Below, one piece after another: positions 1 to 63,287 of a DNA stretch of 64,000 nucleotides. Within the stretch, counting starts at the first letter, position 1; the number at the start of each line of letters is the position of its first letter. The notes below the pieces were generated by a model, which saw only the letters and a program-made list of their open reading frames with translations, was not told the origin of the DNA and made no database searches. Position numbers and translations under genes: made by a program. Location: IMG/VR virus record IMGVR_UViG_3300017991_005548, positions 232,328-296,327 of that record; one strand, written 5' to 3'.

Positions 1-544
1 GATTGGGCTGTGGAGGCTGTTCATACATTTGTTGTTGTTCAGGAGTAACTGGTATTTCTTCCATTGGGGCTTCTTGAAGAACTTGCTCTTCTTCGGGAGT
101 TAACTCACCCTCTAAATCATTCGGCTCCATCAAAGGATCTTCATTCTCAACATTAACTTGAGCAAATCTTGAAAGATTCTTGTAAGTAACATTGCTTTTA
201 AGAGTTCTCACCCAATCATCTCCATCAAACATCTGGAAACCAACATCAATATTGTTTTTGGAAAACCACCCTTTATTAACTTCAACAGCATATTGGCATG
301 GGCTTGAGGAAGTCGTCATTCTTGTACTCATTGGGGCCATGGATTCTATTTGCATAATCTTTCCACTATCATCAAGAAAAGCAATATCCAATGGAATATA
401 GGTGTTCTGCATCCAAAAACTTTGGGGATGCTTTCTAGGAAAGATGAATATCATTCCATCATTTTCCCCCAGTGTTTTACGATCCATTAAACCATAAGAT
501 CGTTTATGGGGAGTATCCGCTATTTCCAAACTCAAATAAGCCAT
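1..544 (-). CDS. DUF192-family protein with acidic C-terminal tail (runs off the window, missed by the ORF track)
   Basis: Manual translation from ATG at 544 (GAGGT upstream): MAYLSLEIADTPHKRSYGLMDRKTLGENDGMIFIFPRKHPQSFWMQNTYIPLDIAFLDDSG...QYAVEVNKGWF matches the DUF192 pattern EVADT..R..GLM / FWM.NT.IPLDIAF / YALEVN.GWF. Confidence 0.85.
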   Translation of the reverse strand, partial: MAYLSLEIADTPHKRSYGLMDRKTLGENDGMIFIFPRKHPQSFWMQNTYIPLDIAFLDDSGKIMQIESMAPMSTRMTTSSSPCQYAVEVNKGWFSKNNIDVGFQMFDGDDWVRTLKSNVTYKNLSRFAQVNVENEDPLMEPNDLEGELTPEEEQVLQEAPMEEIPVTPEQQQMYEQPPQPN

Positions 545-800
545 ATCTTACCTCTTCATCCCAAGGGATTCCGCTTTGATCCAAAGCATCGCAAAGCACT
601 TCGGAAATTTCTCTATCCTCACACTCAAATTGGAGAACCTTAGAACCTGCTTTGTTGGTCATTTCAACTCCACTAGGAATTTCTAAAGTTGCCAGACCAT
701 GAATTAGCATATTGTAATGTCTTCTTGACAATACAGCCCTAATAGCTACTGGTCCGTTTCCTGGTTCGTGTTTTTTATTCCTGATCAGCATCTTTGACAT
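504..800 (-). CDS. hypothetical protein (98 aa)
   Basis: ORF in a co-oriented run, overlapping both neighbours. Confidence 0.6.
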   Translation of the reverse strand: MSKMLIRNKKHEPGNGPVAIRAVLSRRHYNMLIHGLATLEIPSGVEMTNKAGSKVLQFECEDREISEVLCDALDQSGIPWDEEVRYGLFEFGNSGYSP

Positions 801-1245
801 TAAGATTGTTTGATGTGTTAGAGCAGAATTTTGGAATGCGATATCCTTCCTTCCCTCTCTTATCCATGCTTGCCATGATTTCTAAATAACTCTTATCCGA
901 TTTACCTTTCTCGAACTTATTACCTTCACCAAGGGCCATAACAGTAATAACCTGTCTCCCTCGTTCAGTTATTCTAACTTCAGAAGAATCACCAGAAACC
1001 AACCCATAGGTTTTCAGTCTCATGATATCTCGGTTACTAAGACCCATATCAGAAGAAATCACAAACTTATCATCATTGTTCTCTGCTTCGAGCCAAATTC
1101 TCATCAAAATCTCTGCGTCTTTATTACTAGCAGTGATTTTCTTTCTTTTCTCATCACTCTTAATGACTTCTTGTGCAAGAAACGAATAATCAACAAAACG
1201 ATTGTTTTCTTGTGGATCTTGCATTGGTCTAATAGGTATAGGCAT
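775..1245 (-). CDS. hypothetical protein, possible winged-helix region
   Basis: ORF directly after the 794-aa gene; LKTYGLV...VRITERGR resembles a wHTH wing. Confidence 0.6.
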   Translation of the reverse strand: MPIPIRPMQDPQENNRFVDYSFLAQEVIKSDEKRKKITASNKDAEILMRIWLEAENNDDKFVISSDMGLSNRDIMRLKTYGLVSGDSSEVRITERGRQVITVMALGEGNKFEKGKSDKSYLEIMASMDKRGKEGYRIPKFCSNTSNNLNVKDADQE

Positions 1246-1247
1246 AA

Positions 1248-3632
1248 TTACTCTCCAAAATCCAATATTTTATCTAATTCATACTTCTTAAAAAGTTCCT
1301 GGGCTTCCTCTTCATTGAGTGACTCTATCTTTGCCTTCGCAAACTGCAAGAAGTCAACAGAATACTTTTCCAAAAGAACGGGAGCGTATTTTCCAATAGC
1401 TTCCTCTAATTCACTATCAATATCAAGACCAAGCTTGATTGACAAATACAACGCTCTCAATATAATGAATGGGTTGAATGACAATACATCATCTGCATCC
1501 ATGACCGTTTCGATATAATTATCTCCATTAAAAGGAGTGATGAACGATCCAGTGTAAGGGTTATATCCTCTAGCATTAATAGTGAAATCCTTGTTGCAAA
1601 TATCATGCAATACATGGCTGGAAGAATCAAGATCCTGTTTTTTCATCCATCTCTCGATAGTTGGGATCTTTTGTCCTCCATTGAAACAAATCTTCACGCC
1701 TTTGTGATTAAAACAAAAACATCTAGTTGCTGGATCAATCTCAGAGACCTGTTCTCCCAATTCTTCAGCCAACAAACTTCCGAATTTATGGCAGTTTTGG
1801 GATGAATCACTTGTAAATTCAAGTTCCTCAACTTCTGGAGATCTGTTCCCAAAAGATTTCTCTCTTGCATAAGAACCGATAGCATAAACATCTTTGATAT
1901 CGTATTCATGAGCCACACTCTTTGCGGCATCCATAATGCAACTAATAGCATCTTCAAGCGTTGGTCTGCAACCAACAACCTTTGACATAATCTCTCTTAG
2001 TTGTTCATCATTGTTCTGAATAGCATCTTCGACTTTTTCAATTTCTTCACTACCAACTCCCCTATGAATCCAGCAGGAGTATATCTCTTCTCCATCGGAC
2101 TCTCCCAAAGAAAACATATCGACTCCAATAGGACTGCGCCCCATTGACTTTTCAATAACTGACAACATATCTTCACTACAAACAATCCTAGTTGCCTTCA
2201 TATCGCCCCTAAGAATGATTGATCGTATTTTTCTCAACATATCAACAATATGTCCAAGCCCACCCGAAGCAAAACGTTTTGCAGGATGAGTGTTGCTTAA
2301 GTCTCTTGTTGAATCAAACCAACTCTCTGGTTTGAACCTTGGCTCGATCCATCTGTAATAAAACCCCTTGATGTCATATGTTGGGTTATATCTAGGTTGT
2401 GACTTTATCCAGTCCTCTTCTTCTGAAAAACATTCATCTCTGTCATCCCAGGCCATGACTCTGTCACCTAACCCAGGAATAGTTGATCCATCAGAAATTT
2501 CGAGATTATTGTACCACCCAAAAACTGTCGCCATCTTTGTCATCTTTGATGCTTGCTTTAAAGGCATCATCAATGGTTGTGGTCTAGTATCTTCCAGAAG
2601 ATCTTCAGTGATTCTATATCCAGTATCGTCTTTGAGCCTGTCTTTGTCAAGCAATTCTTCAAAAATGAGATCAGGATCTAATTCCCAATCACCTTCAGTA
2701 AATTTCCTCAACTGAACTTCATAGATGTCATGTTCTGGAGATAGGTCTGGAGGGAGTGGAGCCTGATACTGTCTGCCAAGCATTTCTTCGATTGCTCGAT
2801 TTTGATATTGATGGGCGATCATACCCCAATCTGGTTGGGCCTGGAAATTTGCTCCATGATCACCATATCTTCCTGACAAATCAGATCCTGAGGGAGGATA
2901 GAATGGAAAGTGGCTTTGAGCTTCTTTATACCAATTATTTGAGGCTCCTTGCCTTAAACTTAGTTCACCCTCTATGCTGTATTTCTGCTGAATCTCTCTC
3001 ATGGCAGATTCAAGTAATGCTGTCTCAACTTGAGTTGGACCTGCTTCGTCTTCTGCCCCTTTAGCATGAGTGGCTTCGTGAGCCATTGTAGCGGCCATGT
3101 GAGCTATCATAAGATCTTGTCTTAGCTCTGCATGCATTTCTGGTGGAACGATGTCCTGAAGGTTCCTAAAGGATTGCTCCATCTCATTACGAGTGTCTGC
3201 TACATTCAGTCCTAGAACTGATCCTCCTTTACTTTCTAGATCAGCATATACTTGCTGGATTTCATTACGGATAGTTTCTTGGTCTTTCTCTTCTTTAGTG
3301 TCATACGCTCGAAGCATTCCATCTTCTTCGACAATTTCATAACCTCTTGATTCAAGTCTTTTTTGAAGTTCTTGGGTTTTGACTGCCCTATCTAGTGACG
3401 GAACATAAACTCCATAAACACCAGCTTTCGCGAAGTTGAACATATAAACAATATTCTGCAAAAGATTTGAGTCGAATCGATTGACTAAGTCAACTGATTT
3501 CTGGGCATCGCCAAATTGGGAAGAGATGTTGGAGATGTTAACACTTGGGCTTCCGATCAAACTACCTTTATACTCTGGAGCATCACCAGAGTAATACCCT
3601 CCGTAGTCTTGAGATACTTTTATGATTTTCAT
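1248..3632 (-). CDS. multidomain protein: HExxH metallopeptidase-like N-terminus plus degenerate CCA-adding/poly(A) polymerase-like C-terminus
   Basis: AHEATH motif; C-terminal VYAIGSYARE...ELEF, DFTINA and NPFIILRA match class II nucleotidyltransferase motifs VGG.VRD/DxD, RRDFTINA and DPLRILRA. Confidence 0.75.
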   Translation of the reverse strand: MKIIKVSQDYGGYYSGDAPEYKGSLIGSPSVNISNISSQFGDAQKSVDLVNRFDSNLLQNIVYMFNFAKAGVYGVYVPSLDRAVKTQELQKRLESRGYEIVEEDGMLRAYDTKEEKDQETIRNEIQQVYADLESKGGSVLGLNVADTRNEMEQSFRNLQDIVPPEMHAELRQDLMIAHMAATMAHEATHAKGAEDEAGPTQVETALLESAMREIQQKYSIEGELSLRQGASNNWYKEAQSHFPFYPPSGSDLSGRYGDHGANFQAQPDWGMIAHQYQNRAIEEMLGRQYQAPLPPDLSPEHDIYEVQLRKFTEGDWELDPDLIFEELLDKDRLKDDTGYRITEDLLEDTRPQPLMMPLKQASKMTKMATVFGWYNNLEISDGSTIPGLGDRVMAWDDRDECFSEEEDWIKSQPRYNPTYDIKGFYYRWIEPRFKPESWFDSTRDLSNTHPAKRFASGGLGHIVDMLRKIRSIILRGDMKATRIVCSEDMLSVIEKSMGRSPIGVDMFSLGESDGEEIYSCWIHRGVGSEEIEKVEDAIQNNDEQLREIMSKVVGCRPTLEDAISCIMDAAKSVAHEYDIKDVYAIGSYAREKSFGNRSPEVEELEFTSDSSQNCHKFGSLLAEELGEQVSEIDPATRCFCFNHKGVKICFNGGQKIPTIERWMKKQDLDSSSHVLHDICNKDFTINARGYNPYTGSFITPFNGDNYIETVMDADDVLSFNPFIILRALYLSIKLGLDIDSELEEAIGKYAPVLLEKYSVDFLQFAKAKIESLNEEEAQELFKKYELDKILDFGE

Positions 3633-3703
3633 ATTTTAACTCAGGAAAATTGTACAATTGCATTTTTATTCTCACTTTTCCGTTGAATGTCCTATTTGGG
3701 CAC

Positions 3704-3731
3704 AAAAAAACGGGACTATTTCTAGTCCCGT
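3704..3731 (-). terminator. Rho-independent terminator
   Basis: Minus strand ACGGGACTA-GAAA-TAGTCCCGT followed by a T-run, downstream of the 115-aa ORF. Confidence 0.85.
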
Positions 3732-3761
3732 ATATTATACATTTTATTGTGGGCCGAAAAC

Positions 3762-4109
3762 TTAGATGCCAAAACCTCCTGCATCATAAGGATCAACGGC
3801 CATTGGGGAGTCGTCCAGAGGATTGTAGCCGTCCTCTTCCTCTTCTTCGTCATTTTCAAGTGGATTGAAAGTGACAGAGGCTTGGCGATGCACCATCTCC
3901 CCCTTCTTTGTTAATTCTGGTTCCCCAGAAGATCCGCCAATTTGTTCAGCGATGTACTTCACAATTTTGGCATTGATGTTTTCACCGTTTTCATCAATCG
4001 CAGTACATGAGACTTGCTCCCCATGGTCCAAGATTGTAACGGTGTACTTTCCTGTCAATTTGTCGATTTTTACTTCGACATCGAGATGAGTTCCAAAAAG
4101 GTCAGCCAT
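3762..4109 (-). CDS. DUF2997-like small protein
   Basis: VEVKIDKLTGKYTVTI..HGEQVSC...IAEQIG...PELT resembles DUF2997; GGAG SD; adjacent to a DUF1257-like gene. Confidence 0.5.
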   Translation of the reverse strand: MADLFGTHLDVEVKIDKLTGKYTVTILDHGEQVSCTAIDENGENINAKIVKYIAEQIGGSSGEPELTKKGEMVHRQASVTFNPLENDEEEEEDGYNPLDDSPMAVDPYDAGGFGI

Positions 4110-4119
4110 TGTTATACTC

Positions 4120-4563
4120 CTAAACCATTCCGTTCAAAATGTCGTCACCATCGATCTTGAACTTGAAGATGAAGTTATCATCATCTTCTTCCTCGGTGAA
4201 GCCCAGTACGTCCAAACGATTGACCATCGTCTTGGCTTTGTACCTTCCGATTTCACCTGGGAGTTCATCTTCGAACTTCTTCTGGCGCTTTCCAGCGACA
4301 GAGCTATGACCACCCAAAGCAACAATCCATTTATTGCCTTCCCGTCTCATACCGAATTCCTCGTAGCAAACTCCTTTTGCTCCGACTGGAACGCGAATGT
4401 GATAGGTTGACTTGGCTTGTTGATAGCCACTTCTCAAAGAAATGTTTCCAGATTCAGAAGTGTCGATTTGACCTTTCCATTCTGGGACCATGTTTTCGAG
4501 AACTCTGGCCATTGTTTGGACATCGCAATTTGCTTGCACTTCACCATAAACATAGTGACTCAT
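4120..4563 (-). CDS. DUF1257/Ycf35-like protein (start revised to MSHYV)
   Basis: GGAGAAGAGCA-ATG at 4563; MSHY...VLENM...EFGMRREGNKWIV...RY pattern resembles DUF1257. Confidence 0.5.
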   Translation of the reverse strand: MSHYVYGEVQANCDVQTMARVLENMVPEWKGQIDTSESGNISLRSGYQQAKSTYHIRVPVGAKGVCYEEFGMRREGNKWIVALGGHSSVAGKRQKKFEDELPGEIGRYKAKTMVNRLDVLGFTEEEDDDNFIFKFKIDGDDILNGMV

Positions 4564-4589
4564 TGCTCTTCTCCTTGGTTGTTTTTGTT

Positions 4590-5651
4590 TTATCTTGCTA
4601 CTTGAATACCATTCTTTTCGCAAAATTCGATGGCGTATATTGAGAATACTCCAGCACTCAATCCGTAGTTGTCGTTGTCTCCAACAATTGCAGTTATTAC
4701 TCCGATAACCTTACCATCATGACGATTGATAATTGGACCGCCACTGTTTCCTGGTAATATTGCGAGATCTAAAAACATGTATAGAGGTGCTCCATTATGA
4801 GAATAGATCTCCCTGTCAAGAGAGCTAACATAACCGAAAGTTGTGTTGTTTTCGAATCCATGAGGACTTCCAACTGCAAAAATTTCATCTCCGACATTAA
4901 CGATTTGATCGAATTCAAAAGGTTTTGCATTGATATCGGCCTTCAGTAAAGCTAGGTCTTTAGCTCCATCAAAGGCTATAACCTCTGCGTTAACCATCTG
5001 ATCTCCATCTTTGATCAGTACCCTTATCATATCCTCATATTCAGAGAAGTCAAGCGAGCTTTCAGTATTTTTGTTGTAATTTTTTACGACATGGGCGCAA
5101 GTAAGGAAATAATTAGGGGCTACGCAGAAAGCAGAACCCGTTTCCTCAGTATTCGTGCTGAAGTTCTGTGACTTTACAACAAACGTCTTTTCAAGAGCCT
5201 CATCAACTTGATTTGGTTCTGGTTCAGCTTGCGCTACTCTAGAGATCCATTTGACAAGAACTCCCCTCTCTTCCATCTTTCTTCGATATTGTTGAGCCGA
5301 TTCCAAAGATGGGAAAGTTTTATAGCCACCTCTAACCTTTAACTTCCAAACCTCTTTATCACCAGAATTATTAGTAAGGTTTCTGAAGATGTCTAAATCT
5401 CTTTCTCTTCTTTTGTAATCGTCACCCTCATCTTTGTAAGATCCAGGTTGAGATTCTTCGTTCCTTGACCAATCTCCCCAATCACCTTGTTGACCTGGGA
5501 GTTTATATTGTTTGCCAGTCAATACATCCCATATGGTATGCACATTATTGAAGGGCATAACGGATTTTGGAGTAGTGGGACTTAAGCCAGAGCCTGGATA
5601 TAGAATCTCAGGCATTGTTGTGCGATAAGCTTTTTTCTTTTGTTTGCCCAT
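4590..5651 (-). CDS. trypsin-like (S1/HtrA-like, no PDZ) serine protease with N-terminal extension
   Basis: Catalytic triad motifs LTCAHVV, DLALLK and PGNSGGP. Confidence 0.92.
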   Translation of the reverse strand: MGKQKKKAYRTTMPEILYPGSGLSPTTPKSVMPFNNVHTIWDVLTGKQYKLPGQQGDWGDWSRNEESQPGSYKDEGDDYKRRERDLDIFRNLTNNSGDKEVWKLKVRGGYKTFPSLESAQQYRRKMEERGVLVKWISRVAQAEPEPNQVDEALEKTFVVKSQNFSTNTEETGSAFCVAPNYFLTCAHVVKNYNKNTESSLDFSEYEDMIRVLIKDGDQMVNAEVIAFDGAKDLALLKADINAKPFEFDQIVNVGDEIFAVGSPHGFENNTTFGYVSSLDREIYSHNGAPLYMFLDLAILPGNSGGPIINRHDGKVIGVITAIVGDNDNYGLSAGVFSIYAIEFCEKNGIQVAR

Positions 5652-5667
5652 TTTTGATACCTAAATT

Positions 5668-5702
5668 AAGTGTACTCTAACTTATTCAAAAAAAGTACAC
5701 TT
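5668..5702. promoter_or_regulatory. inverted repeat enclosing a GAATAA motif upstream of the protease
   Basis: AAGTGTACT-N17-AGTACACTT; minus-strand loop contains TTTGAATAAG. Confidence 0.55.
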
Positions 5703-5709
5703 TGAACCT

Positions 5710-6540
5710 TTAGACTTCAATAAAGGCATCTCCAAGTTGATCTTCTTCATCAACTTCATCTGGAATGAAGGCATTTTCCACATCTTCATCTACAGGTTCT
5801 TCTTCATCGATAAAAGCATCTTCTACATCATCTCCGAAGATTTCATCAACATCTAGGAAATTTGCATCTGGTCTATCACCGAAAGCATTGTTTTTCATTT
5901 CAACCTGGGTTGCCTTGCCATTGCCAGCGCCAATAACAGCGGTTGTTCCCATTCTTTCAGATGGATCTAACAAAGATTCATCGATGGGTGTTTCTTCCTC
6001 AACCTCTTCCCCTGCCTCTTCTGCATCAAGCTTTGCGGCGGCTTTCATGGATGCCTCACAACGAGGCTCATTTTCATCAATTTCCCCATTCATCTTGTGA
6101 ACCATCTCTTGAGTCTTAGGCCCTACATCAGTCATTACAACCACTTTCTCTTTTGGTTTTTCTTCCTTTTCAGCCTTCTTTTCAGTTTTCTTGCTTTTGC
6201 TCTTGCCTCTTCTTGACTTAGGCTTCCTTTTGGGCTTCTCTTCTTCAGCCTTTTCTTCAGGCTTTTCTTCAGGCTTTTCTTGGGGAGGTTCAGTGGTCAG
6301 AATCTCTTCTACCTTTTCTGCTTCTTTAGGTTTTTCTTCGATCACTTCCATACGAATCAAACCATAGTTGGCAACTTGTCTGAGTTCACTTGCTTGCGCT
6401 TCGTTTTCAACTTCGATATTTAAAGCGTAACTACATCCATCACATTTTTTAGGATTGGGGTCATATTTACCCCTAAGCATCATGCCAATAGTGTTGAAGG
6501 AAATTGTAGCTTCTGTCAAACCATATACGTTAACTTTCAT
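5710..6540 (-). CDS. hypothetical K/E-rich then acidic protein
   Basis: 276-aa ORF with GGGAG SD and TGTATAAT upstream; low-complexity charged segments. Confidence 0.75.
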   Translation of the reverse strand: MKVNVYGLTEATISFNTIGMMLRGKYDPNPKKCDGCSYALNIEVENEAQASELRQVANYGLIRMEVIEEKPKEAEKVEEILTTEPPQEKPEEKPEEKAEEEKPKRKPKSRRGKSKSKKTEKKAEKEEKPKEKVVVMTDVGPKTQEMVHKMNGEIDENEPRCEASMKAAAKLDAEEAGEEVEEETPIDESLLDPSERMGTTAVIGAGNGKATQVEMKNNAFGDRPDANFLDVDEIFGDDVEDAFIDEEEPVDEDVENAFIPDEVDEEDQLGDAFIEV

Positions 6541-6777
6541 AATAAAACTCCCAATTTAGTCTTGGTGTTGTTTATTATACAAATTAACCGAGCAGATCTA
6601 ACCCTATGTTTTTGTCTTGCATAAAGGTGTTGATGTGTTTAAGGAAAAGAGCTTTCTCTTGTGGAGTAAAAAATGCAGATGCAAGTAAACTACTCAACTC
6701 ATCACTTGTCGCAGGGATATCATCCTCGTCAAACGATCTTTTGAATGAAACAAATGCTCGACTTACTTTCTGGTCAT

Positions 6778-7719
6778 CTACTTTTTTTTTGTAGCTTCAA
6801 CGATTTGACGGTTTTTGAAATAATTGGATGCAAAGAGTCTATCTTCCTCATCCATTAGATCTTCTTCGTCTAAGTCAGTTACTTCAAAATCCTCACCCAC
6901 TTCGTCAAGACCGATTTGGTAAGTTACAATGCCCTGACTAAGTTTTGAATCATCAAATGAAGCTAATGAAAATGGAATTTCGCCATGATGTTTGGACATG
7001 AAGTATTCCAAATCGTCAGCGATATCTTCCAAAGTCAAACTACTTGTATCGTTTGTACCAGTTATTTCAAGTTTACCAACAGCGGTAGGGGTTCCACCTA
7101 TGTCAATCTCTTCGTAGTAGACTTCTTTAACAGCTTCTAGAACATCATCGTCGTCTCCGAGGTCTTCTATTGGAAAATCAGGATCGATTTCATTAATTTC
7201 AAAGTCCTGTCCATAAGGATCATCTAGGATATCATCCATATTGTCTTCAAGACTACGATCACGTTCCACATAATCCCAATCAATATCCATTGACTGAGCT
7301 TTCTTCTCGAAAGCTATTTTAAGGCCATCTTCGCTTTTGATTTCCCACCATCTTTGTCGCTTGGGAGTTTCTGAGGCTGTCTCATACTCCTCTCCTTCGA
7401 TATTGTAATCGGCCAATCGTTTCTCTTCAAGCTTATTCATATCACCTTCATAAGCTTGAGCATTTCTGTGTTTAGAACCAAATTCATCTTTGGCTTCATC
7501 TAGGTTTTTCTCAATAACAACTTCTGCACTACCAGTTCTGTTGTTTTCAAGAAGCTTTTCCATAACTGAATCTTTGTCACCTACGTGATGAGGATCTAAC
7601 TGCTTATCTGTAATTTCCTCTGGAATGTCGCCATGGGATTCTGACAACATGCGATCAGTATGGGCATCTTCATCTAATTTTTCATAGACTACAAATTTAT
7701 ATTCAGACATTTTATGCAC
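6778..7719 (-). CDS. acidic protein, possible head scaffold/core protein
   Basis: 313-aa D/E-rich ORF next to the terminase, AGGAG SD; function inferred from context only. Confidence 0.55.
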   Translation of the reverse strand: MHKMSEYKFVVYEKLDEDAHTDRMLSESHGDIPEEITDKQLDPHHVGDKDSVMEKLLENNRTGSAEVVIEKNLDEAKDEFGSKHRNAQAYEGDMNKLEEKRLADYNIEGEEYETASETPKRQRWWEIKSEDGLKIAFEKKAQSMDIDWDYVERDRSLEDNMDDILDDPYGQDFEINEIDPDFPIEDLGDDDDVLEAVKEVYYEEIDIGGTPTAVGKLEITGTNDTSSLTLEDIADDLEYFMSKHHGEIPFSLASFDDSKLSQGIVTYQIGLDEVGEDFEVTDLDEEDLMDEEDRLFASNYFKNRQIVEATKKK

Positions 7720-7769
7720 TCTCCTGAAGAATATTTCTTATTTGTTCTTCTTCTATTATAAAAAATCCT

Positions 7770-11776: not shown

Positions 11777-11788
11777 AGCTAAAACCTA

Positions 11789-17836: not shown

Positions 17837-18613
17837 ATGATTAACAACAAAAATAATTGGTATTCTGAGGCTAGAGAAGCCTCTTTAATCGTTCAAGAAG
17901 CTGGTATCACTGATAACTGGAAAACATTGGTGTTTGCGGTTGCACTTGTTTTATCAGGGTTATCTCTAATTGATGTATCTGAGAAGACTGGATTACCACC
18001 TGAACAAATACAACAAGCCCTCAATAATAAAGAAATAGTTGAACAAGCTCAAAATCAGGAAGAATCATCAATGCCTAGATTAGATTTCTCTGGAATCGAG
18101 GAATTAATTCGACAGCATGAAGTTTCTGGTGCCGAAAGGTATGTTAGAGTTAAAGGTAAAAACGTTGACATAAGAAAAGCATATCCTGATCCTATTCATG
18201 GATGGAAAGTTCCAACCATTGGTGTTGGTTATAATTTAAACAAACCTGAAGCCAGAGGGGAAATTGAAGCTCTAGGACTAGATTATGACAAAGTCCGTAA
18301 AGGAGAGCAAGCCCTAACTGATGAACAGGTAAATATACTATACCGAGACGATATAGCAAAAGCAATACTTTCTGCAAGAAGATTCCTACCGAATTTCGAT
18401 CAACAACCAACTGAAGTAAAAACAGTAATCGTAGACATGGCTTTTAATTTAGGTGAAACCCGATTGAGAAAATTTAAAAAATTCAGGAAAGCGCTCGAAA
18501 ACAACAATTATCAAGAAGCCGCAGAAGAGATGAAAAACTCTAGGTGGTATCATCAAGTTGGGAATAGAGCGAAAAGAAACGTTGAAAAAATGTTGGAATT
18601 TCACTCCAAATAG
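17837..18613 (+). CDS. GH24/T4-type lysozyme with N-terminal hydrophobic segment
   Basis: LIRQHE...YPD...PTIGVGYNL, IVDMAFNLG, EEMKNSRWYHQVGNRA. Confidence 0.9.
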   Translation: MINNKNNWYSEAREASLIVQEAGITDNWKTLVFAVALVLSGLSLIDVSEKTGLPPEQIQQALNNKEIVEQAQNQEESSMPRLDFSGIEELIRQHEVSGAERYVRVKGKNVDIRKAYPDPIHGWKVPTIGVGYNLNKPEARGEIEALGLDYDKVRKGEQALTDEQVNILYRDDIAKAILSARRFLPNFDQQPTEVKTVIVDMAFNLGETRLRKFKKFRKALENNNYQEAAEEMKNSRWYHQVGNRAKRNVEKMLEFHSK

Positions 18614-21938: not shown

Positions 21939-22511
21939 ATGGGTAAAGAAGACACCAATCCCTGCAACAATCTTGAAGACAACCGAATTATTTATGTAAA
22001 TGGAAATTTCAACGAAGAAATGACCAAGAACATATATGAAAAGCTAATAGCACTGGAAACAAAAGATCCTAGAAAAGACATTTTCATGGTCATTGACTCT
22101 TATGGTGGATACTGCCACAGCTTCCTTGCAATTCATGATGCCATGAAAATGTGTAGGTGTGATGTTGCAACGTTTTGTATTGGGAAAGCTATGTCATGTG
22201 GGCAAATGTTATTGATGTCTGGGACTAAGGGTAAGAGATTTGCCTCCCCAAATTGCAGAATACTTGTCCATCAACTTTCTAGTGCTTGTTGGGGAACTTT
22301 GTCAGAAATGCAGGTCGAAGTTACTGAGAGTGAAGAAATCCAGAAAATTATGGACAAAATCATTCTTGAGAACACTGGGATGACCAAAAGGGAATTAAAA
22401 AAGCTGATGTCAAGAGATTCTTATCTATCTCCAGAAGAAGCTATAGAATTTGGAATTGTTGATAAGGTCGTTACCAGTTATAAAGACATTTACAAAACGG
22501 TAAAAATCTAA
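21939..22511 (+). CDS. clpP: ClpP-family protease
   Basis: IDSYGG, catalytic Ser AMSCG, His ILVHQ, RD.YLSPEEAIEFGIVD. Confidence 0.93.
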   Translation: MGKEDTNPCNNLEDNRIIYVNGNFNEEMTKNIYEKLIALETKDPRKDIFMVIDSYGGYCHSFLAIHDAMKMCRCDVATFCIGKAMSCGQMLLMSGTKGKRFASPNCRILVHQLSSACWGTLSEMQVEVTESEEIQKIMDKIILENTGMTKRELKKLMSRDSYLSPEEAIEFGIVDKVVTSYKDIYKTVKI

Positions 22512-43203: not shown

Positions 43204-43663
43204 GTTCGTCCTCTTTATTTTCTAGAACAAAGTCGGAAAACTCTTCCTTCCAAGGCCCATAATAACCATGTTGTACTGCTAGTCTTTTGGCATCCCGAAC
43301 GGTATACCTATGAATATTTTCTTCTTTAAAGGTAATTTCTGGTTTTCCACTTTGAAATGAATCAGCCGTTGGCATATTCACTAATCCACCTAATAAATAA
43401 TAATCCCATTTCTTATATGTTTCTTGATTTCTTGAAGTGTCAATTACAGTATCGCCATCTTCAACCCATGCATGGCCAAACTGAACACCTGCCAAAGGCC
43501 CCATTAATGGTCGGATTATTGCATGAACCAATATCAGATCATCTCTCCCTTTCATTACACCTTCTTCGAAAATGTAATTAAACGCTTGGGTAAAGCAGTC
43601 GCCACCTTTATTTTCTTCAGGGATGTGGTCGTACTTTTCTTGGGATTCTTTGTACCAATTCAT
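43184..43663 (-). CDS. papain/transglutaminase-like Cys-His protein
   Basis: GDCF...GHAWVE...VID...YYGPW; begins MNWYKESQ. Confidence 0.7.
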   Translation of the reverse strand: MNWYKESQEKYDHIPEENKGGDCFTQAFNYIFEEGVMKGRDDLILVHAIIRPLMGPLAGVQFGHAWVEDGDTVIDTSRNQETYKKWDYYLLGGLVNMPTADSFQSGKPEITFKEENIHRYTVRDAKRLAVQHGYYGPWKEEFSDFVLENKEDEHGSDQY

Positions 43664-53439: not shown

Positions 53440-55833
53440 ATGATCCTAGAGCAAACAAAAATATTAACTAATCGATACCCTCCAGAATATTTTTCTATGG
53501 ATTTAGATAACCGTGGATATCCACATCTTGTTTGGGTAGAGCAAAAGAATGGTCATTTCGATCTCATCTATAAATTCTGGAATGGACTCGACTGGGAATC
53601 TCTAGAAACAGAAGTTATCTATAGATCCGACGAAGACATCTCATATGTGAATTTGGTAATTGCAAGTGGGAAAGTCCTAATCATATTTTTGAAAAAATCT
53701 GATGAAAACTCGGTAATAGGATTTGTAAAAATCGATCAAGTTGTCGAAGAAATTATTGAATACGAAACGGGAGGCTTTGTAAACTGGGTTAGCCTTATAA
53801 CAGATACTACTGAAAAGAAAAGACCTTATGTAATTACTCATGAAGTATATGAATTCAAAGTTTATCAATTAACTGATGAAAATCTGATATTGAAGAGTTT
53901 ACAATCAAAGGTTCTTGACGATTTTGATAACATCAAGGTTTCAAATACAGTTGACAATTTTATTATTGCAATTAATGGTGAAGAAAGTATAGAGTTTAAT
54001 TTCTATGATTACACTTCCAATACTTGGGCCAATTCAAGTTTTATTGAACTTTCTAGTTCAGCAGTTGGTAATGTCGTTGATTTTGATGTTAAGGGGTTGG
54101 CATCATCTAGTAAGGCAGGATTCACGTTTTTAAGAAACGATACCGCAGATCAAATTTATTATGTTGTCTCTGATAGCTCAGGAACTGAAACCACTCTTGG
54201 GACAAACCCAATACACCAAGTCTCAACCAGTCTTACCGCGCCTAATGGTTTCTCAATAGGTGGATTCGTAAATGTAAGTTTATCATATGAAAGCGACTTT
54301 AAACCTAACATATTCGTCCTTGGAACTCAGAACATAAAACTTTCTTATAACGGTGAATGGAATTCTGATATCATAGGAGTCCCAACAAAATCAGAATCAA
54401 CAGTATTTATATTCAACTCATTTAATATTGTGACCGTCTCTAGTGGACAAATATACTTTTTCAATTTGGTTGATGACGCTATCGTTGGAGAGGAAGTCTT
54501 AATTTCTTTACTAAATGCAAAAGAGTTTATTGTCTCAGATTGGAAAAAAGGAGCACTCGTTCCTCAAGAGTTAAGTTTTGTCGATAATTATGACAATGAA
54601 GTTGGGGACATATTGAGGGATGCATTGTCTCCAATACTTGTGACAGCTTCAAATGAACATCCAGGTTATGCATCATCATCATCAACCTCATCAGAAAGTT
54701 CGCCAAGCTCTAGTTCGACATCGTCAACTTCTGATAGCTCACCAAGTTCAACATCATATAGCTCCATAAGTTCATTATCTATTAGTTCACAATCCGTTTC
54801 CGATAGCTCTTCATCTCAATCATTGTCCTCAAGTTCCTCAAGCTCATCAAGTGGAGGTTACTCCGAATCGTCATCATCTAGTGTTGGTTATTCTGAATCA
54901 TCATCATCTAGCATAGGGTTCTCTGAATCATCTAGTTCAATTTCCGAATCTTCAAGTGAAGGGTTCTCTGAATCATCCCCATCAAGCCAAGGAAATTCAG
55001 AATCATCTAGTTCATATTCTGAGTCCTCAAGTGGAGGTTATTCAGAATCGTCATCAACTGGAAATGTTCGTTTTGAATATTTGTTGTGTGACTTATTTAC
55101 GGAAAGTATAAGCTCAGAGTCGTCTAGCTCTGATCCGATGTCAAGTAGCTCTCAATCAATGAGTAGCAAATCTGAATCCAGCAGTTCTCAGAGTGAAAGT
55201 TCTCAATCTGAAAGCTCTCAATCTGAAAGCTCTAGTTCAGAAGCAATACTAGACAGTTCATCATCCTCTTCTTCTTCGTCTGATGGAGGAGTGCCAGCCG
55301 CAATCGAATGTACATTTAATCATGGATGGCCTGGATGTACTCTTACTGACCCAAAAGTTAACATAACACTTACTGGAATTAACTCTGGAAACTCTGATGG
55401 AGGAAGTGGGACTCCACTAGATCCATATTACAAAACATTCTTTGGATGTAATTTTACCAATGGTCAACCCCAAGAAATATGTGGAACATTTGGAAGCAAC
55501 GCAAGTTTAGAATACTGGAGCGTTACTGGTAGTCAAGAAAGATTAAGGTTGGAAGCTTGGGCCGTAAGTAGTCGTCATAGAGTAAATGTATATACCACAT
55601 CTATATGGAATCCGAATGGAATTTTTGAAAAATTCATAAATGGTGGAAATACATTCACTATAAATAACTGGAATGGGGACACCACACCTCCTAATGATGC
55701 TTATGTAACACCTACCAACTGGTCCATTGGTGGAGTTAAAATCTTAGATGAGCAATTTGGCTATGTTGTGAATACTGATGGAATAACCATTAGATGGGAC
55801 CGTGGAGCGAATGGATCTGGTCAAAGTTGGTAA
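53440..55833 (+). CDS. 797-aa protein: N-terminal propeller-like region, Ser tract, Cys-containing C-terminal domain
   Basis: D..GYPHLVW...LIYKFWNG..W blade; [GV]GYSES repeats. Confidence 0.75.
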   Translation: MILEQTKILTNRYPPEYFSMDLDNRGYPHLVWVEQKNGHFDLIYKFWNGLDWESLETEVIYRSDEDISYVNLVIASGKVLIIFLKKSDENSVIGFVKIDQVVEEIIEYETGGFVNWVSLITDTTEKKRPYVITHEVYEFKVYQLTDENLILKSLQSKVLDDFDNIKVSNTVDNFIIAINGEESIEFNFYDYTSNTWANSSFIELSSSAVGNVVDFDVKGLASSSKAGFTFLRNDTADQIYYVVSDSSGTETTLGTNPIHQVSTSLTAPNGFSIGGFVNVSLSYESDFKPNIFVLGTQNIKLSYNGEWNSDIIGVPTKSESTVFIFNSFNIVTVSSGQIYFFNLVDDAIVGEEVLISLLNAKEFIVSDWKKGALVPQELSFVDNYDNEVGDILRDALSPILVTASNEHPGYASSSSTSSESSPSSSSTSSTSDSSPSSTSYSSISSLSISSQSVSDSSSSQSLSSSSSSSSSGGYSESSSSSVGYSESSSSSIGFSESSSSISESSSEGFSESSPSSQGNSESSSSYSESSSGGYSESSSTGNVRFEYLLCDLFTESISSESSSSDPMSSSSQSMSSKSESSSSQSESSQSESSQSESSSSEAILDSSSSSSSSSDGGVPAAIECTFNHGWPGCTLTDPKVNITLTGINSGNSDGGSGTPLDPYYKTFFGCNFTNGQPQEICGTFGSNASLEYWSVTGSQERLRLEAWAVSSRHRVNVYTTSIWNPNGIFEKFINGGNTFTINNWNGDTTPPNDAYVTPTNWSIGGVKILDEQFGYVVNTDGITIRWDRGANGSGQSW

Positions 55834-57104: not shown

Positions 57105-57308
57105 TTAGGATCGTATACTTCTGTTATCTAGAACAGGGAAGGGAGGGTCTTTGAAAGGTTGTGGATCATCTACTTTACCAGAATACATAAAAGGTTCCCA
57201 TCCTCCACCACAATTCTCGCAGACAATCCATCGATCTTTTACGTTGATTTCATTCTGATAACCGCAATGCGGACATTCTTCCTTAAATGCTATTTTTATA
57301 ATTCTCAT
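57105..57308 (-). CDS. small zinc-ribbon protein
   Basis: CPHCG...CENCG. Confidence 0.7.
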   Translation of the reverse strand: MRIIKIAFKEECPHCGYQNEINVKDRWIVCENCGGGWEPFMYSGKVDDPQPFKDPPFPVLDNRSIRS

Positions 57309-57589: not shown

Positions 57590-58296
57590 TAATACCACCT
57601 AAATACATCTATCATTTCTGATACATGATCAAATTGATAATTGTTATCTTCTGCACTAACACTTATATCACTAGCACCACTAGCGATTTCAATCATTCGT
57701 CTTATTTGGCTTCTTGTTGGCTTCCGATACCAATCAAAGCTAACATAATCCCCAGAAGGAGCATGCATTCTAATGGCTCCTGTCGCATACATAAACTGTC
57801 TCATCCCCATTGTCCCACCACTTAACTCATCAATATCCTGGGTAATCTCCCTATGATCAACATCTCTATTGTGACCAGTATAACTCATACTAAGGAGATC
57901 ACCATCTCTCATGATATATCCAGCTAGATTTGGATACTCAGTTCTAGGCCAAGCATCTATAGCATTCTCAATTTTTATTTGAAATGACTCATCAGATTTA
58001 GCTCTTTCCAAGATGTCTTGCTCCATCTGCTGTTCTTTTTCGTATTCCTTATTTCTTCTGTCAATTTCTTTCAAGGCAGGCGCTGTCAATATTTTTATTC
58101 GCTCAGAAAGTTCGTTAAGATATGATCGCATTTTTTCGACACGATTATTAAGAGTTGCTTCATCAAGATCTTTACGTTTCAGAATGTCAAGAAACTTTCC
58201 ACTTATATTGGTTTGCTGTTCTTTCAAAGCCTGATATTCTTCCCAGTCTTGATCTGACATGTAGGGTTTTAAACTGGCGACTCGTATTAATCTCAT
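57589..58296 (-). CDS. coiled-coil plus AGYI..DG..L...DHREI...GAIR domain protein
   Basis: C-terminal pattern recalled from large phage polyvalent proteins (not verified). Confidence 0.6.
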   Translation of the reverse strand: MRLIRVASLKPYMSDQDWEEYQALKEQQTNISGKFLDILKRKDLDEATLNNRVEKMRSYLNELSERIKILTAPALKEIDRRNKEYEKEQQMEQDILERAKSDESFQIKIENAIDAWPRTEYPNLAGYIMRDGDLLSMSYTGHNRDVDHREITQDIDELSGGTMGMRQFMYATGAIRMHAPSGDYVSFDWYRKPTRSQIRRMIEIASGASDISVSAEDNNYQFDHVSEMIDVFRWY

Positions 58297-61800: not shown

Positions 61801-62553
61801 TTTAGAAAGATAAGGTCTTGCCATACTATCTCCAGTACACCATCCTCTTGGTACACTAAGGTTCTTCAGCTTTTGGACATTCTCATCAAAGTTATCTGGA
61901 TCATTTTTCGCTGAAGGTATTCTAATCCAGCCATCCTCTTCATCCGTTTGAAATTTTTCCAAGTCCTGTGATTCAACTTTAGTCAACGCCCTTTTATACG
62001 CCTTCATAATATTAATGGGGCCAGTGTCATCACCAACATCCCCAAAAACATTAGCAAGGGCCAAAGCATTATGACCGATGATTGGTCTTCTTGTATCAGA
62101 AGGAGAAGAGTCAAAAAGTGGTTTTAGAACCATGTAAATGAATGCTGGGCGTTTGGCATACTCGTCATTCTCTTTTGTCATGTAATTCCACCAAAGCTCA
62201 AAGGCTTCTTTCTTTCTCTTGTTAATGGGTTCAATGATTGCATCTTTTGCAGACTGAACATCTCTCTTTACCAACCTTGCCGCCCTTTGGACATCAGGAT
62301 TATCCATGTTTCTCTCAAATTCTCTTTCGAGATCAATATCTTTAATGAAATGATTGCTTTCACTTTTCGGATCGAAAGCTTCCTTCACTTTGGGTAAAAG
62401 AGTCCCACTAATAAAGTTATTGATGTCTTCCTGGGATTTTATCTGATTCCAAGGGACAAGATTCTCATACTTCCTAATAAAAGTTTTTAGATAAGGATCG
62501 TCTATTTTGTAACGAATTATCTTATCTCTCGCTGATGCAAATATAAATTTCAT
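58888..62553 (-). CDS. 1221-aa protein: GWCT...GDF...RVAIR domain, DUF4116-like repeats, C-terminal WYL/Sm-like domain
   Basis: GWCTGDSMARPYLSKGDFW...RVAIRFEG..IQEIQG; VPYHLRED, IPLVFRED; FTIGFKKQDGSFRIMNA...YDLQK..YRRV. Confidence 0.7.
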   Translation of the reverse strand: MKFIFASARDKIIRYKIDDPYLKTFIRKYENLVPWNQIKSQEDINNFISGTLLPKVKEAFDPKSESNHFIKDIDLEREFERNMDNPDVQRAARLVKRDVQSAKDAIIEPINKRKKEAFELWWNYMTKENDEYAKRPAFIYMVLKPLFDSSPSDTRRPIIGHNALALANVFGDVGDDTGPINIMKAYKRALTKVESQDLEKFQTDEEDGWIRIPSAKNDPDNFDENVQKLKNLSVPRGWCTGDSMARPYLSKGDFWLLIKDKEARVAIRFEGDRIQEIQGDHNKRPFDYWEEILKLIDKKGFDKESHHYKQLLDAKLLNDRLDNDPNFIDEFKVEFLEKPETFEMLSRERQKQPEFLDLAALYWNTKIQNAELKPPNFWTSAPSLYNECPQEIKPRLDKKSLDSVYNSFINAPKSHVPVLSGLAGETKHSFFNLEPYAMAYARFLEPYVKEKPWVGALIHYKVEKFMDQEIIQKAREDQAYEAILDFETIEEGNENPGDILNNHFYDGSSGPYDDEYRFEELVDLSQEQLDEMYKKDKDPEHEDYLEDKELPDSFYDETFIDHIKSNLADYWHSYVTVDPKDRYEEVESFLRENTYLADWDDYTDCRSEWENAWNDEIYEDPTKINEAPSEIAEYLYSDYADDDDNWYVSAWVNYTLQDFDNFTEAKHYIYSERHLDYFYEKILEQVDDEILQRAIISDPDLILEEEWFKVINSHSNFIENNKAFIIRFIDQYIEEKPENIHYMLDIVEEMRDEHELYESEDDEKLVEKYEEMFRQYWIEWMQKRPYEFEKVPYHLREDPDIVKARIGTLDDWKQYLWDVSPKVYDTAPEKIRMQEEFYHEATKANIVQRLGFSDMEGLIQFDSSVERYKDDEHFYDKALANAKASYKRHVSQYWQSVGDVEKTKAIFGRVPNFVINDPELMKHTAEVICRAWMGGYRNSTPLTGKELSSVDPRLAELMIPIMQTIVNEDYRIYSYSDFYKQSQFINEAYRMYPDKFQEQYDKLKNMYFGYMNSDIERSLNFIPLVFREDREVINALREKAQELNIDLSEKEAWQDIGHQPDDNQLEFDFTYDEENKMSQSWYDRHKRKVFGQAPQLIDAMEVEGIIEGFGTRRFTIGFKKQDGSFRIMNAQRRVQRPYEGREQGDYAPVRAYMTLYDLQKASQIAKEALSDVDVNELDPALLRLAYRRVYPQSVEFIKGGGQTYIVRGSDYAIENGFIEEE

Positions 62554-63287
62554 GGGCGTTGTCCTTTTAAAAAATTATAAAGCATTTGATTAATACCATC
62601 TATGGTTACCTGTTCAGGTGGCATCTTCGCAACTAATCTTTTCATATACATTATATACGAACCTATGTAATCTCTACTGTTATACATGGCCCCCTGAGTA
62701 TCGCTAATTTGGAAATCGAATCCATACTTATTCAAATAAAACATAGTCTTCATTCTGGCAAACTTATTGGCAGTTTGCTCTATCCACATTAGTCTGTCAA
62801 TATCTTCTTCAAGCTGGGCTGGGTCATTGGTATAAATTGACATTGCAAAGTCATCACCATATTTACGGTATTGGTAAAAGTGAGCTAGTTCATGAAACAA
62901 AACAAACATCAGGTCGGAAGGATATTTCTTTAATACTGAGTTATCTATGACACATTGACCATGCATGGCGATCCCTTGTGCTCCAGTTAACTCCTCAAAA
63001 ACGTAAGGGACTCCGATAGCATCAATTTCATTGGAAATATCATGTGCCCAATTAGTTGCCATGTTTCCTGCTTTTAAATCAAGTTCCCCACAAACAACTT
63101 TCAATGCTATCTCATAAGCTTCTACAGTTTTCCCACCATACTCTTCCATTTCCTCATACACTTCTTTCTTGATCTCTTTGTCATCATTCAGTAACTTATG
63201 AGAAATATGGAGATATAAAGACCTTTCGATTTTATTGAAAGTGTCTGCCCCTGCAACAACAGTCTTACTGGTTTTGATTAATTTCAT
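62550..63287 (-). CDS. HExxH metallopeptidase-like protein
   Basis: FVLFHELAHFYQY with downstream E (WIEQTAN). Confidence 0.75.
   Translation of the reverse strand: MKLIKTSKTVVAGADTFNKIERSLYLHISHKLLNDDKEIKKEVYEEMEEYGGKTVEAYEIALKVVCGELDLKAGNMATNWAHDISNEIDAIGVPYVFEELTGAQGIAMHGQCVIDNSVLKKYPSDLMFVLFHELAHFYQYRKYGDDFAMSIYTNDPAQLEEDIDRLMWIEQTANKFARMKTMFYLNKYGFDFQISDTQGAMYNSRDYIGSYIMYMKRLVAKMPPEQVTIDGINQMLYNFLKGQRP

What the first reader, a model, noticed from the sequence alone, without database searches (positions are those of the whole stretch)
158..63287. Shared [KR]-x-[AS]-Q / NWY[KS]E / M[KR]xI[KR] motif at N-termini and domain boundaries of unrelated proteins: putative head-targeting or cleavage signal
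Seen at N-termini: MKIIKVSQ (3632), MRIIKIAF (57308), MRLIRVAS (58296), MKLIKTSK (63287), MKFIFASA (62553), MNWYKESQ (43663) and NNWYSEAR (lysozyme, ~17855). Seen internally at domain junctions: NLSRFAQ after DUF192 (158-172), NNWYKEAQ after the HExxH domain (2916-2936), AKRFASGG before the NTase-like part, WISRVAQ just before the trypsin catalytic domain (5229-5240), EKKAQ (7294), LIKQAQ (11123), and SWY...KVFGQ before the WYL-like domain of the 1221-aa protein. The carriers belong to unrelated folds. Known: T4 gp21 and phiKZ gp175 cleave head proteins at short motifs, and T4 internal proteins use an N-terminal capsid-targeting sequence. Inference: this is a similar but different code that marks enzymes for packaging or cuts fusion proteins into units. 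The S1 protease carrying the motif at its own propeptide junction is the prime candidate enzyme.
Basis: partly seen in the sequence, partly recalled or inferred. Interest (0 to 1): 0.85.

Follow-up and report, generated by a model that had tools for sequence, protein, structure and literature searches.

The report
Shared eight-residue leader on phage proteins
Many unrelated proteins of this uncultured large phage and its relatives begin with, or carry at domain junctions, the same roughly eight-residue motif (M-N-W-Y-K-x-A-Q or M-K-I-I-K-x-[AS]-Q), which is virus-specific, is unreported in the literature I could search, and most resembles the capsid-targeting and cleavage leader of phage T4 internal proteins.

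Summary
Every quoted string is present. The loose pattern [KR]x[AS]Q is not enriched (15 seen, 13-19 expected). The full forms are far above chance: NWY[KS]E[AS][QR] occurs 3 times against 0.0002 expected, and M[KR][IL]I[KR][VIT][AS] 4 times against 0.04.

A strict DNA pattern for M-N-W-Y-K-x-[AS]-Q recovers 200 unique ORFs from viral and metagenome contigs. Of these, 190 are true N-termini, often in tandem arrays. In 596 Gb of cellular genomes, 30 matches include only about 6 genuine ORF starts.

The NWYK and K[IL]IK forms replace each other in orthologues. Internal copies are conserved at domain-linker junctions in four module proteins: an HtrA-like S1C protease, a 794-aa HExxH/nucleotidyltransferase protein (three sites), a DUF192 protein and a protein next to the terminase. 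Twelve other families in the module have none.

Carriers include lysozymes, SLT, GNAT, ART-PolyVal, kinases, HTH proteins and Tad6.

Best reading: a T4-CTS-like address or processing motif for cargo proteins. No cleavage or packaging is shown. The S1 protease family is too narrowly distributed to be the universal reader. "MKFIFASA" and "LIKQAQ" are not instances.

The parts
3609..3632 (-). N-terminal leader MKIIKVSQ of the 794-aa protein
   Evidence: K-x-[AS]-Q directly before D[YF]xGY[YF] is kept in most of the 10 orthologues. It lies after a 300-380-aa extension in four of them.
2916..2939 (-). Internal NNWYKEAQ after the HExxH domain of the 794-aa protein
   Evidence: [NST]WY[KR]x[AS]Q is present in the window protein and all 10 orthologues, flanked by linkers of variable length. 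AF2 gives pLDDT below 50 for residues 225-244.
2253..2276 (-). Internal AKRFASGG (third site) of the 794-aa protein
   Evidence: THPAKRFA[SQGAK] is conserved in 9 of 10 orthologues and is followed by a variable linker.
1251..3632 (-). 794-aa protein: leader, HExxH domain, motif, middle part, motif, PolyA_pol/CCA-type nucleotidyltransferase
   Evidence: The HExxH domain has no significant PDB fold match.
5229..5249 (-). WISRVAQ at the junction between the N-terminal part and the catalytic domain of the S1 protease
   Evidence: W-[IV]-x-[RK]-x-A-Q is conserved across 25 family members at 41-76% identity. AF2 predicts it as strand 135-140 of a small beta-beta-alpha-beta unit.
4593..5651 (-). S1C (HtrA/DegP-like) serine protease without a PDZ domain; candidate reader
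   Evidence: Pfam Trypsin_2 at 4e-23. H187, D232 and S303 are invariant. Foldseek matches DegP at 4e-15. 676 homologues were found.
158..178 (-). NLSRFAQ directly after the DUF192 domain
   Evidence: [KR]-x-[AS]-Q is conserved in orthologues and followed by a P/E/Q-rich linker and a second domain.
7294..7308 (-). EKKAQ in the 313-aa protein encoded next to the terminase gene
   Evidence: Orthologues have K-x-x-K-[IVT]-A-Q at this place, followed by an acidic variable linker.
43640..43663 (-). Leader MNWYKESQ of the 159-aa protein
   Evidence: The orthologue in L246 (36% identity) starts MNWYKLAQ.
17852..17875 (+). NNWYSEAR near the N-terminus of the lysozyme (17837-18610)
   Evidence: Lysozyme homologues in L296, L264 and L203 start MNWYK[KI]AQ, followed by a TM segment or a LysM domain.
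58273..58296 (-). Leader MRLIRVAS of the 235-aa protein
   Evidence: The orthologue P0122 (42% identity) starts MKLIRIAN.
63264..63287 (-). Leader MKLIKTSK of the 245-aa small HExxH protein
   Evidence: Close homologues start MKLIKTAK, MKIIKLAY, MKIYKIAS, MNWYKLAS, MNWYKKAS or MSWYKKSF.
57285..57308 (-). Possible leader MRIIKIAF of the 67-aa zinc-ribbon protein
   Evidence: It fits the pattern, but no orthologues were examined.
21939..22508 (+). ClpP homologue; the protease part of the machine invoked by the rival degron reading
   Evidence: Pfam CLP_protease at 1e-52.

Best explanation
The motif is a short linear address or processing signal. Its consensus is hydrophobic-hydrophobic-[KR]-x-[AS]-[Q>S,N,K], spelt M-N-W-Y-K-x-A-Q or M-K-[IL]-I-K-x-[AS]-Q at N-termini.

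Shown:
- It is selected at the protein level.
- It is virus-specific.
- It heads hundreds of unrelated, mostly small proteins that often sit in tandem arrays.
- It is conserved at domain-linker junctions of four proteins in the terminase-proximal module, including an HtrA-like protease.

Inferred:
- As with the T4 capsid-targeting sequence, it recruits cargo and effector proteins (lysozymes, ADP-ribosyltransferases, acetyltransferases, RNA-repair enzymes, regulators, an anti-Thoeris protein) to the assembling procapsid, so that they are delivered with the DNA.
- In this lineage it is also a cleavage site that removes the leader and separates the domains of multi-domain proteins.
- The S1C protease is the most likely enzyme here. 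The cut would fall at or next to the A-Q pair.
For: Enrichment:
- The full forms are enriched in the window.
- Synonymous codons vary freely within the leader, and no conservation follows residue 8.

Distribution:
- The strict pattern finds 69 viral matches. Nearly all start an ORF, and many contigs hold several.
- At least 120 metagenome loci match.
- Only about 6 of 30 matches in 596 Gb of cellular genomes start a genuine ORF.

Constraints next to the motif:
- Among 200 leaders, position 9 is depleted in D, G and P (P 2/200, about 8.6 expected), and P is also depleted at position 10. Proline is enriched at positions 11-15.

One motif, used internally too:
- The two spellings are interchangeable in orthologues.
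- Internal sites are conserved in the S1 protease, the 794-aa protein, the DUF192 protein and the 313-aa protein.
- An unbiased scan of 16 orthologous clusters flagged only S1, the 794-aa protein and DUF192.
- A Y.DIGH unit that is free-standing and tagged in some contigs is fused behind 590-637 aa through the motif in L035 and L181.

Context and cargo:
- Tag islands hold up to about 13 consecutive genes.
- The major capsid protein (phrog_2522) lies within a few kb of tagged genes in at least five contigs (eight loci), including the window's own genome.
- Carrier domains overlap those of injected polyvalent proteins: ART-PolyVal, PcfJ, GNAT, SLT, lysozyme (PMC7824862).

Precedents:
- Diverse T4 internal proteins share only a capsid-targeting sequence (PMC3012670).
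- In SPN3US a prohead protease cuts many head proteins, and itself, at one motif (PMC10052503).
Against: - There are no experimental data. No cultured phage has the S1 orthologue.
- The S1 family is far narrower than the leader's distribution.
- G6PD, an aldo-keto reductase and several leader-plus-TM proteins are unexpected capsid cargo.
- In the AF2 model of the protease the motif is a strand of a folded unit, not a free linker.
- The candidate MCP (287-290 aa) shows no propeptide and no motif.
- The HtrA fold has no precedent that I know of as a head-maturation protease.
- An 8-residue motif conserved across phages whose terminases share only about 29% identity could point to a host-encoded reader.
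Confidence: 0.42

Rival explanations
1. The motif is a docking motif for a partner unrelated to the capsid, phage or host. Candidates are a chaperone, a replication or assembly factory, or a membrane site. It is not cleaved, and it simply concentrates tagged phage proteins at one place.
For: - The motif occurs at N-termini, in inter-domain linkers and near C-termini. That is typical of short docking motifs.
- It heads metabolic enzymes (G6PD, aldo-keto reductase), HTH regulators and TM proteins.
- It is much more widespread than the S1 protease.
- It is strongly conserved across distantly related phages, which would suit a conserved, possibly host-encoded, reader.
Against: - No partner has been identified.
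- The motif is essentially absent from cellular proteins.
- The sites sit exactly at the domain-linker boundaries of a protease and of multi-domain proteins.
- The depletion of P, D and G just after Q fits a scissile region at least as well.
Confidence: 0.22
2. The motif is an N-terminal degron or recognition tag for an AAA+ protease such as ClpXP. The phage supplies ClpP, and the tag gives tagged proteins a controlled lifetime.
For: - The window encodes a full-length ClpP.
- Phage G, the nearest cultured relative by MCP, encodes ClpP and ClpX, and both were detected in particles (PMC12484599).
- The leader resembles the ClpX N-terminal motifs (polar-hydrophobic-hydrophobic-basic-hydrophobic, and Met-basic-hydrophobic...). 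This is recalled from Flynn et al. 2003 and was not checked here.
Against: - The near-invariant A-Q pair is not part of the ClpX motifs as I recall them.
- Conserved internal copies at domain junctions are hard to explain as N-terminal degrons.
- No ClpP homologue was seen in the tag-bearing loci fetched, although these are only partial genomes.
Confidence: 0.12
3. The motif has no dedicated function. It would be a by-product of selection on the first codons for translation initiation, of recombination between gene cassettes, or of shared ancestry of paralogue N-termini.
For: - K/I/N-rich starts are common in A+T-rich genomes.
- Tagged genes lie in tandem arrays that could shuffle by recombination.
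- Some arrays are true paralogues: MKLVKTASGKQTIKIS occurs five times with two near-variants in L092.
Against: - Synonymous sites vary, and the motif includes Trp (TGG).
- The motif is conserved internally, where translation initiation is irrelevant.
- Carriers are unrelated beyond residue 8.
- It is absent from cellular genomes of all compositions.
Confidence: 0.06

Closest known systems
Capsid targeting sequence (CTS) of phage T4 internal proteins (IPI-III; Mullaney and Black 1996; PMC3012670)
   Same: - A short N-terminal leader of about 10 residues is the only thing shared by otherwise unrelated, mostly small proteins.
- Many carriers are anti-defence or host-takeover proteins.
- As I recall it, the T4 CTS ends in the head-protease site.
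   Different: - The sequence differs: T4 is MKTYQEFIAE from memory, against MNWYKxAQ here.
- The motif here also occurs internally at conserved domain junctions.
- The phages are not T4-like by terminase or MCP.
- The candidate protease has an HtrA fold, not the gp21 type.
- Packaging and cleavage are unproven.
Head-maturation cleavage motifs of giant phages (phiKZ gp175, SPN3US gp245; PMC10052503) and of T4 gp21 (L/I-x-E)
   Same: - One short consensus marks many head proteins.
- The protease carries a site itself.
- Propeptides range from short to long, and several sites can occur in one protein.
   Different: - Those motifs end in Glu and are cut by proteases that, from memory, have the herpesvirus-assemblin fold. 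Here the consensus is [KR]-x-A-Q and the candidate enzyme is an S1C protease.
- Most leaders here are only 8 residues long.
Herpesvirus assemblin release and maturation sites (cut between Ala and Ser; from memory)
   Same: A protease fused to another domain cuts itself at a conserved site with a small residue before the cut, and so separates the domains.
   Different: The fold and the viruses are unrelated, and there is no N-terminal tagging of cargo.
Polyvalent proteins of phages and conjugative elements (Iyer et al. 2017, cited in PMC7824862)
   Same: - The effector-domain repertoire is the same: ART-PolyVal, PcfJ, GNAT, SLT or lysozyme, metallopeptidase-like HExxH domains and nucleotidyltransferases.
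- Delivery with the DNA has been proposed for them.
- As I recall that proposal, the multi-domain proteins are thought to be cut into units.
   Different: - Here most units are separate small genes, each with its own leader.
- To my knowledge, no shared junction motif has been described for polyvalent proteins.
ClpX N-terminal recognition motifs (Flynn et al. 2003; from memory)
   Same: A short N-terminal basic-hydrophobic pattern sits on unrelated proteins.
   Different: Those motifs are degenerate and occur in cellular proteins. This one is sharply defined, virus-specific and also internal.

Membership tests
T4-type capsid targeting sequence | A short N-terminal leader is the only similarity among unrelated proteins of one phage, often in variable gene arrays | tested here: met
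T4-type capsid targeting sequence | The leader is sufficient to load a protein into the procapsid | not testable with these tools
   This needs reporter fusions in an infected host, and no cultured member exists.
T4-type capsid targeting sequence | Carriers are found inside virions and are processed at the end of the leader | not testable with these tools
   There is no proteome for this lineage.
T4-type capsid targeting sequence | Sequence relationship to the T4 CTS and a T4-like head module | tested here: not met
   The motif differs from the T4 CTS as I recall it. The nearest terminase is that of Ma-LMM01 and the nearest MCP that of phage G.
Head-maturation protease cleavage motif | A short consensus conserved at propeptide or domain junctions across orthologues | tested here: met
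Head-maturation protease cleavage motif | The protease gene lies in the head module and carries its own site | tested here: met
   The S1 protease lies two genes from the terminase in conserved synteny, and its own site is conserved. That this module is the head module is itself inferred. The portal was not identified, and the MCP is encoded elsewhere in the genome.
Head-maturation protease cleavage motif | A protease of the known prohead types (HK97/S78, T4 gp21/assemblin-like, ClpP/S14, S49) | tested here: not met
   The catalytic domain is HtrA/DegP-like S1C. A separate ClpP exists at 21939-22508, but its role is unknown.
Head-maturation protease cleavage motif | Cleavage demonstrated at the motif | not testable with these tools
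   This requires mass spectrometry or an in vitro assay.
Head-maturation protease cleavage motif | The major capsid protein or scaffold is processed at the same motif | tested here: not met
   The candidate MCP (phrog_2522, about 287 aa) has no propeptide and no motif. The scaffold was not identified.
Sec/Tat/lipoprotein signal peptide | A hydrophobic h-region of 7-15 residues after a basic n-region, plus a peptidase site | tested here: not met
   The leader is 8 residues with no h-region. Only a few carriers have a TM segment further on.
ClpX N-terminal degron | The tag confers ClpXP-dependent degradation | not testable with these tools
   Only a resemblance recalled from memory and the presence of ClpP.
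Polyvalent proteins | A very large protein joining several effector domains with in-built peptidases | tested here: inconclusive
   The 794-aa protein (up to 1235 aa in orthologues) joins an HExxH domain and a nucleotidyltransferase. The HExxH fold has no PDB match. Most tagged proteins have one domain or no recognisable one.

The most novel reading that the evidence does not exclude
A broad, uncultured group of phages uses one portable octapeptide as a universal loading tag. The group runs from contigs of about 40-60 kb to contigs of about 300-550 kb, and those whose MCP was seen are related to Bacillus phage G. The tag would place dozens of unrelated effector enzymes in the capsid for co-injection. 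It would be read and trimmed by a maturation protease of a type not previously seen in phage heads (HtrA-like S1C), and used internally to cut multi-domain proteins into units.
Probability: 0.3. Interest if true: 0.9.

Novelty: new variant of a known kind. Interest (0 to 1): 0.78.

Why it matters
- If the leader is an address tag, it gives a sequence-only way to list the injected or packaged effector repertoire of many uncultured phages. That repertoire would include anti-defence candidates among the unknown small tagged proteins.
- It would give an 8-residue handle for loading foreign proteins into capsids, as the T4 capsid-targeting sequence is already used.
- It would add an HtrA-type enzyme to the known head-maturation proteases.
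- Even if the function is different, a sharply defined, virus-specific octapeptide on hundreds of unrelated proteins needs an explanation.
- Gene callers sometimes skip the leader. P0121, for example, starts at an internal Met.

Tried and rejected
- The loose motif [KR]x[AS]Q as a signal in itself: it occurs at chance frequency.
- Homology among the carriers: none by BLASTP.
- A DNA-level element such as a promoter, RBS or recombination site: the upstream DNA is not conserved and synonymous sites vary.
- Origin from host proteins: the pattern is at chance level in cellular genomes.
- PHROG, Pfam and ESM Atlas annotation of the module proteins (313-548 aa, 276 aa, small ORFs): nothing found.
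- HExxH domain as a known zincin: no PDB sequence or fold match.
- S1 protease as the universal reader: two independent pattern searches find only about 15 IMG/VR contigs. A search with the divergent L255 protease found nothing useful.
- Literature searches for the strings: no relevant paper.
- Phage G virion proteome tables: not held.
- Single-linkage clustering of proteins from tagged loci chained multi-domain proteins into one false family.


Full report
**What the window is.**
- It is part of a large uncultured phage, GC about 0.38.
- Annotated genes: a large terminase (7773-9635, minus strand), a class II ribonucleotide reductase carrying an intein, a ClpP, an S8 subtilase, an S1 protease and a lysozyme. 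There are also huge Ser-rich repetitive ORFs, the largest of 4276 aa.
- The sequence matches IMGVR_UViG_3300017991_005548 (296 kb) and a 476-kb relative.
- The nearest cultured relative by terminase is Microcystis phage Ma-LMM01, at about 26% identity.
- The major capsid protein of the same genome lies outside the window. It belongs to a family (phrog_2522) whose L014 member is 55% identical to Bacillus phage G gp27.

**Check of the observation.**
- The loose pattern [KR]x[AS]Q is not enriched: 15 seen, 13-19 expected.
- The longer forms are strongly enriched, and all four M[KR][IL]I[KR][VIT][AS] matches directly follow Met1. These patterns were chosen after looking at the data, so the decisive evidence is comparative.
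- The carriers are not homologous to each other.
- The motif codons differ at synonymous positions.

**The motif is a widespread, virus-specific N-terminal leader.**
- A degenerate DNA pattern for M-N-W-Y-K-x-[AS]-Q found 69 matches in IMG/VR, giving 66 unique proteins. Almost all have a stop within a few codons upstream, and many contigs carry 2-8 copies.
- The same pattern in 596 Gb of cellular genomes gave 30 matches, mostly out of frame or in tiny ORFs. About six are genuine ORF starts, on MAG contigs that look viral.
- In the pooled 200 leaders, nothing is conserved beyond residue 8 except at two positions. Position 9 avoids D, G and P and prefers Q, S, N and F. Position 10 avoids P. Proline becomes enriched at positions 11-15. 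The median protein length is 141 aa.
- Whole islands of consecutive genes start with the leader or degenerate versions of it. L053 has about 13 in a row.

**The two spellings are one motif.**
- Variants such as MSWYKxAQ, MKIYKIAQ, MKIIRTAQ and MKVIKTAQ occur in the same loci.
- Orthologues of the window's 245-aa small HExxH protein start MKLIKTAK, MKIIKLAY, MKIYKIAS, MKLIKIAN, MNWYKLAS, MNWYKKAS or MSWYKKSF.
- The 235-aa protein's orthologue keeps MKLIRIAN.
- Lysozyme homologues start MNWYK[KI]AQ, and the 159-aa orthologue starts MNWYKLAQ.
- "MKFIFASA" is not a leader. In homologues it aligns to the conserved IKIAGAKEKI that follows an MNWYK leader.

**Internal copies are under selection.**
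- The window shares a syntenic module with contigs of about 18-94 kb, several of them about 52 kb. The gene order is: AAA ATPase, RNR, a 445-aa protein, a 290-aa protein, terminase, a 313-548-aa protein, a 276-aa protein, the S1 protease, small ORFs, the 794-1235-aa protein, a 155-aa protein, then (further on) the DUF192 protein.
- In the 794-aa family (about 40% identity) the internal [NST]WY[KR]x[AS]Q is present in the window protein and all 10 orthologues, between linkers of variable length.
- In the same family, the N-terminal K-x-[AS]-Q before D[YF]xGY[YF] becomes internal in four orthologues that have 300-380-aa extensions. A third site, THPAKRFA[SQGAK], precedes another variable linker.
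- The S1 protease family has 676 homologues, and the 25 aligned share 41-76% identity with the window protein. It keeps W-[IV]-x-[RK]-x-A-Q between a conserved N-terminal part and the catalytic domain.
- DUF192 proteins keep [KR]-x-A-Q right after the domain, before a P/E/Q-rich linker.
- The protein encoded next to the terminase gene keeps K-x-x-K-x-A-Q before an acidic linker.
- An unbiased scan of 16 orthologous clusters flagged only S1, the 794-aa protein and DUF192.
- Elsewhere, a small Y.DIGH unit that is free-standing and tagged in several contigs is fused behind 590-637 residues through the motif.

**Structure.**
- AF2 models the protease catalytic domain confidently, and Foldseek places it with DegP, DegQ and DegS. 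It has no PDZ domain.
- Residues 1-100 are conserved in sequence but modelled with low confidence.
- Residues 101-140 form a beta-beta-alpha-beta unit whose last strand is the motif.
- The HExxH domain of the 794-aa protein folds confidently (pLDDT 81), with both flanking motifs disordered. It matches nothing in the PDB.
- The C-terminal part of the 794-aa protein is a PolyA_pol/CCA-type nucleotidyltransferase.

**What carries the leader.**
- Carriers include GNAT acetyltransferases, AAA_33 kinases, PolyA_pol, HD, cREC_REC, HTH and sigma-like regulators, lysozymes, SLT, LysM, ART-PolyVal, PcfJ, DUF3990, Tad6 and methyltransferases.
- They also include G6PD and an aldo-keto reductase. Several carriers have a TM helix after the leader.
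- The list overlaps the domains of polyvalent proteins, which are thought to be injected with phage DNA (PMC7824862).
- The capsid-protein family lies within a few kb of tagged genes in eight of the tag-bearing loci (at least five contigs), including the window's own genome.

**Interpretation.**
- The closest precedent is the T4 capsid-targeting sequence, where diverse internal proteins share only that leader (PMC3012670).
- A second precedent is the single cleavage motif used by giant-phage head proteases on many head proteins and on themselves (PMC10052503).
- I therefore favour an address or processing signal for cargo proteins, with the S1C protease as the likely enzyme in this lineage.
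- If cleavage occurs, the HtrA fold makes a cut between A and Q at least as likely as a cut after Q. This rests on my knowledge of HtrA specificity.
The strict leader is in about 40. One divergent copy (32% identity, LIIRKNAQ) turned up in L255.
- A docking motif with no cleavage, or a ClpXP-type degron, cannot be excluded. ClpP is encoded at 21939-22508.

**A lead for testing.**
- Phage G is cultured and has published particle proteomes.
- It carries a related leader, M-K-R-L-I-K-K-[AS], on 8 genes in its first 100 kb against about 0.1 expected. Weaker variants also occur.
- I could not obtain its protein tables.
- No paper in the searchable library mentions either leader.

Noticed in passing
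window 11848-15348 (-): The class II (B12-dependent) ribonucleotide reductase carries an intein of about 320-360 aa with a LAGLIDADG endonuclease, at roughly residues 322-680. Relatives in L092 and L102 lack it (815-822 aa).
   Followed up: yes
window 29467-42294 (-); also 26324-29404, 45546-49994, 50008-53436, 53440-55830: A 4276-aa ORF and four other large ORFs share Ser-rich, highly repetitive segments. Pfam gives only weak BclA_C and LRR hits for two of them. They are probably fibre or surface proteins, and none carries the motif.
   Followed up: partly
window 1-16600 versus L092-L102: A module of about 16 kb (AAA ATPase, RNR, terminase, S1 protease, 794-aa protein, DUF192) is syntenic between this 296-kb contig and contigs of about 18-94 kb. 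I did not examine whether the huge contigs are real megaphages or chimeric assemblies.
   Followed up: no
L314 and L315 (Bacillus phage G, 1-100000): Phage G genes gp17, gp38, gp126 and others start M-K-R-L-I-K-K-[AS]. This is a related N-terminal leader in a cultured megaphage whose MCP is 55% identical to this lineage's MCP.
   Followed up: partly
L092 14467-16605; L102 16311-17140: Tandem small paralogues (seven in L092, two in L102) start MK[LI]VKTASGKQTIKIS or a close variant. It is unclear whether this is a longer version of the leader or ordinary paralogy.
   Followed up: no
L019 8235-10489 (-): Five tandem paralogues start MKIR[KQN]GFVSNSSSSSF, next to an island of MNWYK-tagged genes.
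   Followed up: no
proteins P0148-P0253: Distant homologues of the 245-aa HExxH protein mostly start MKIIITE.Q..L..E. This may be another conserved N-terminal leader in other viruses.
   Followed up: no
window 10412-11776 (-): The 455-aa protein, conserved beside the terminase, has a weak Pfam Tubulin_3 hit (E 0.004, below the cut-off).
   Followed up: no
window 57592-58296 (-) versus P0121: The public gene call for this protein starts at an internal Met and omits the leader. Automatic annotation may therefore undercount leaders.
   Followed up: partly
window, upstream of the seven gene starts printed: No obvious Shine-Dalgarno sequence precedes these seven genes.
   Followed up: no
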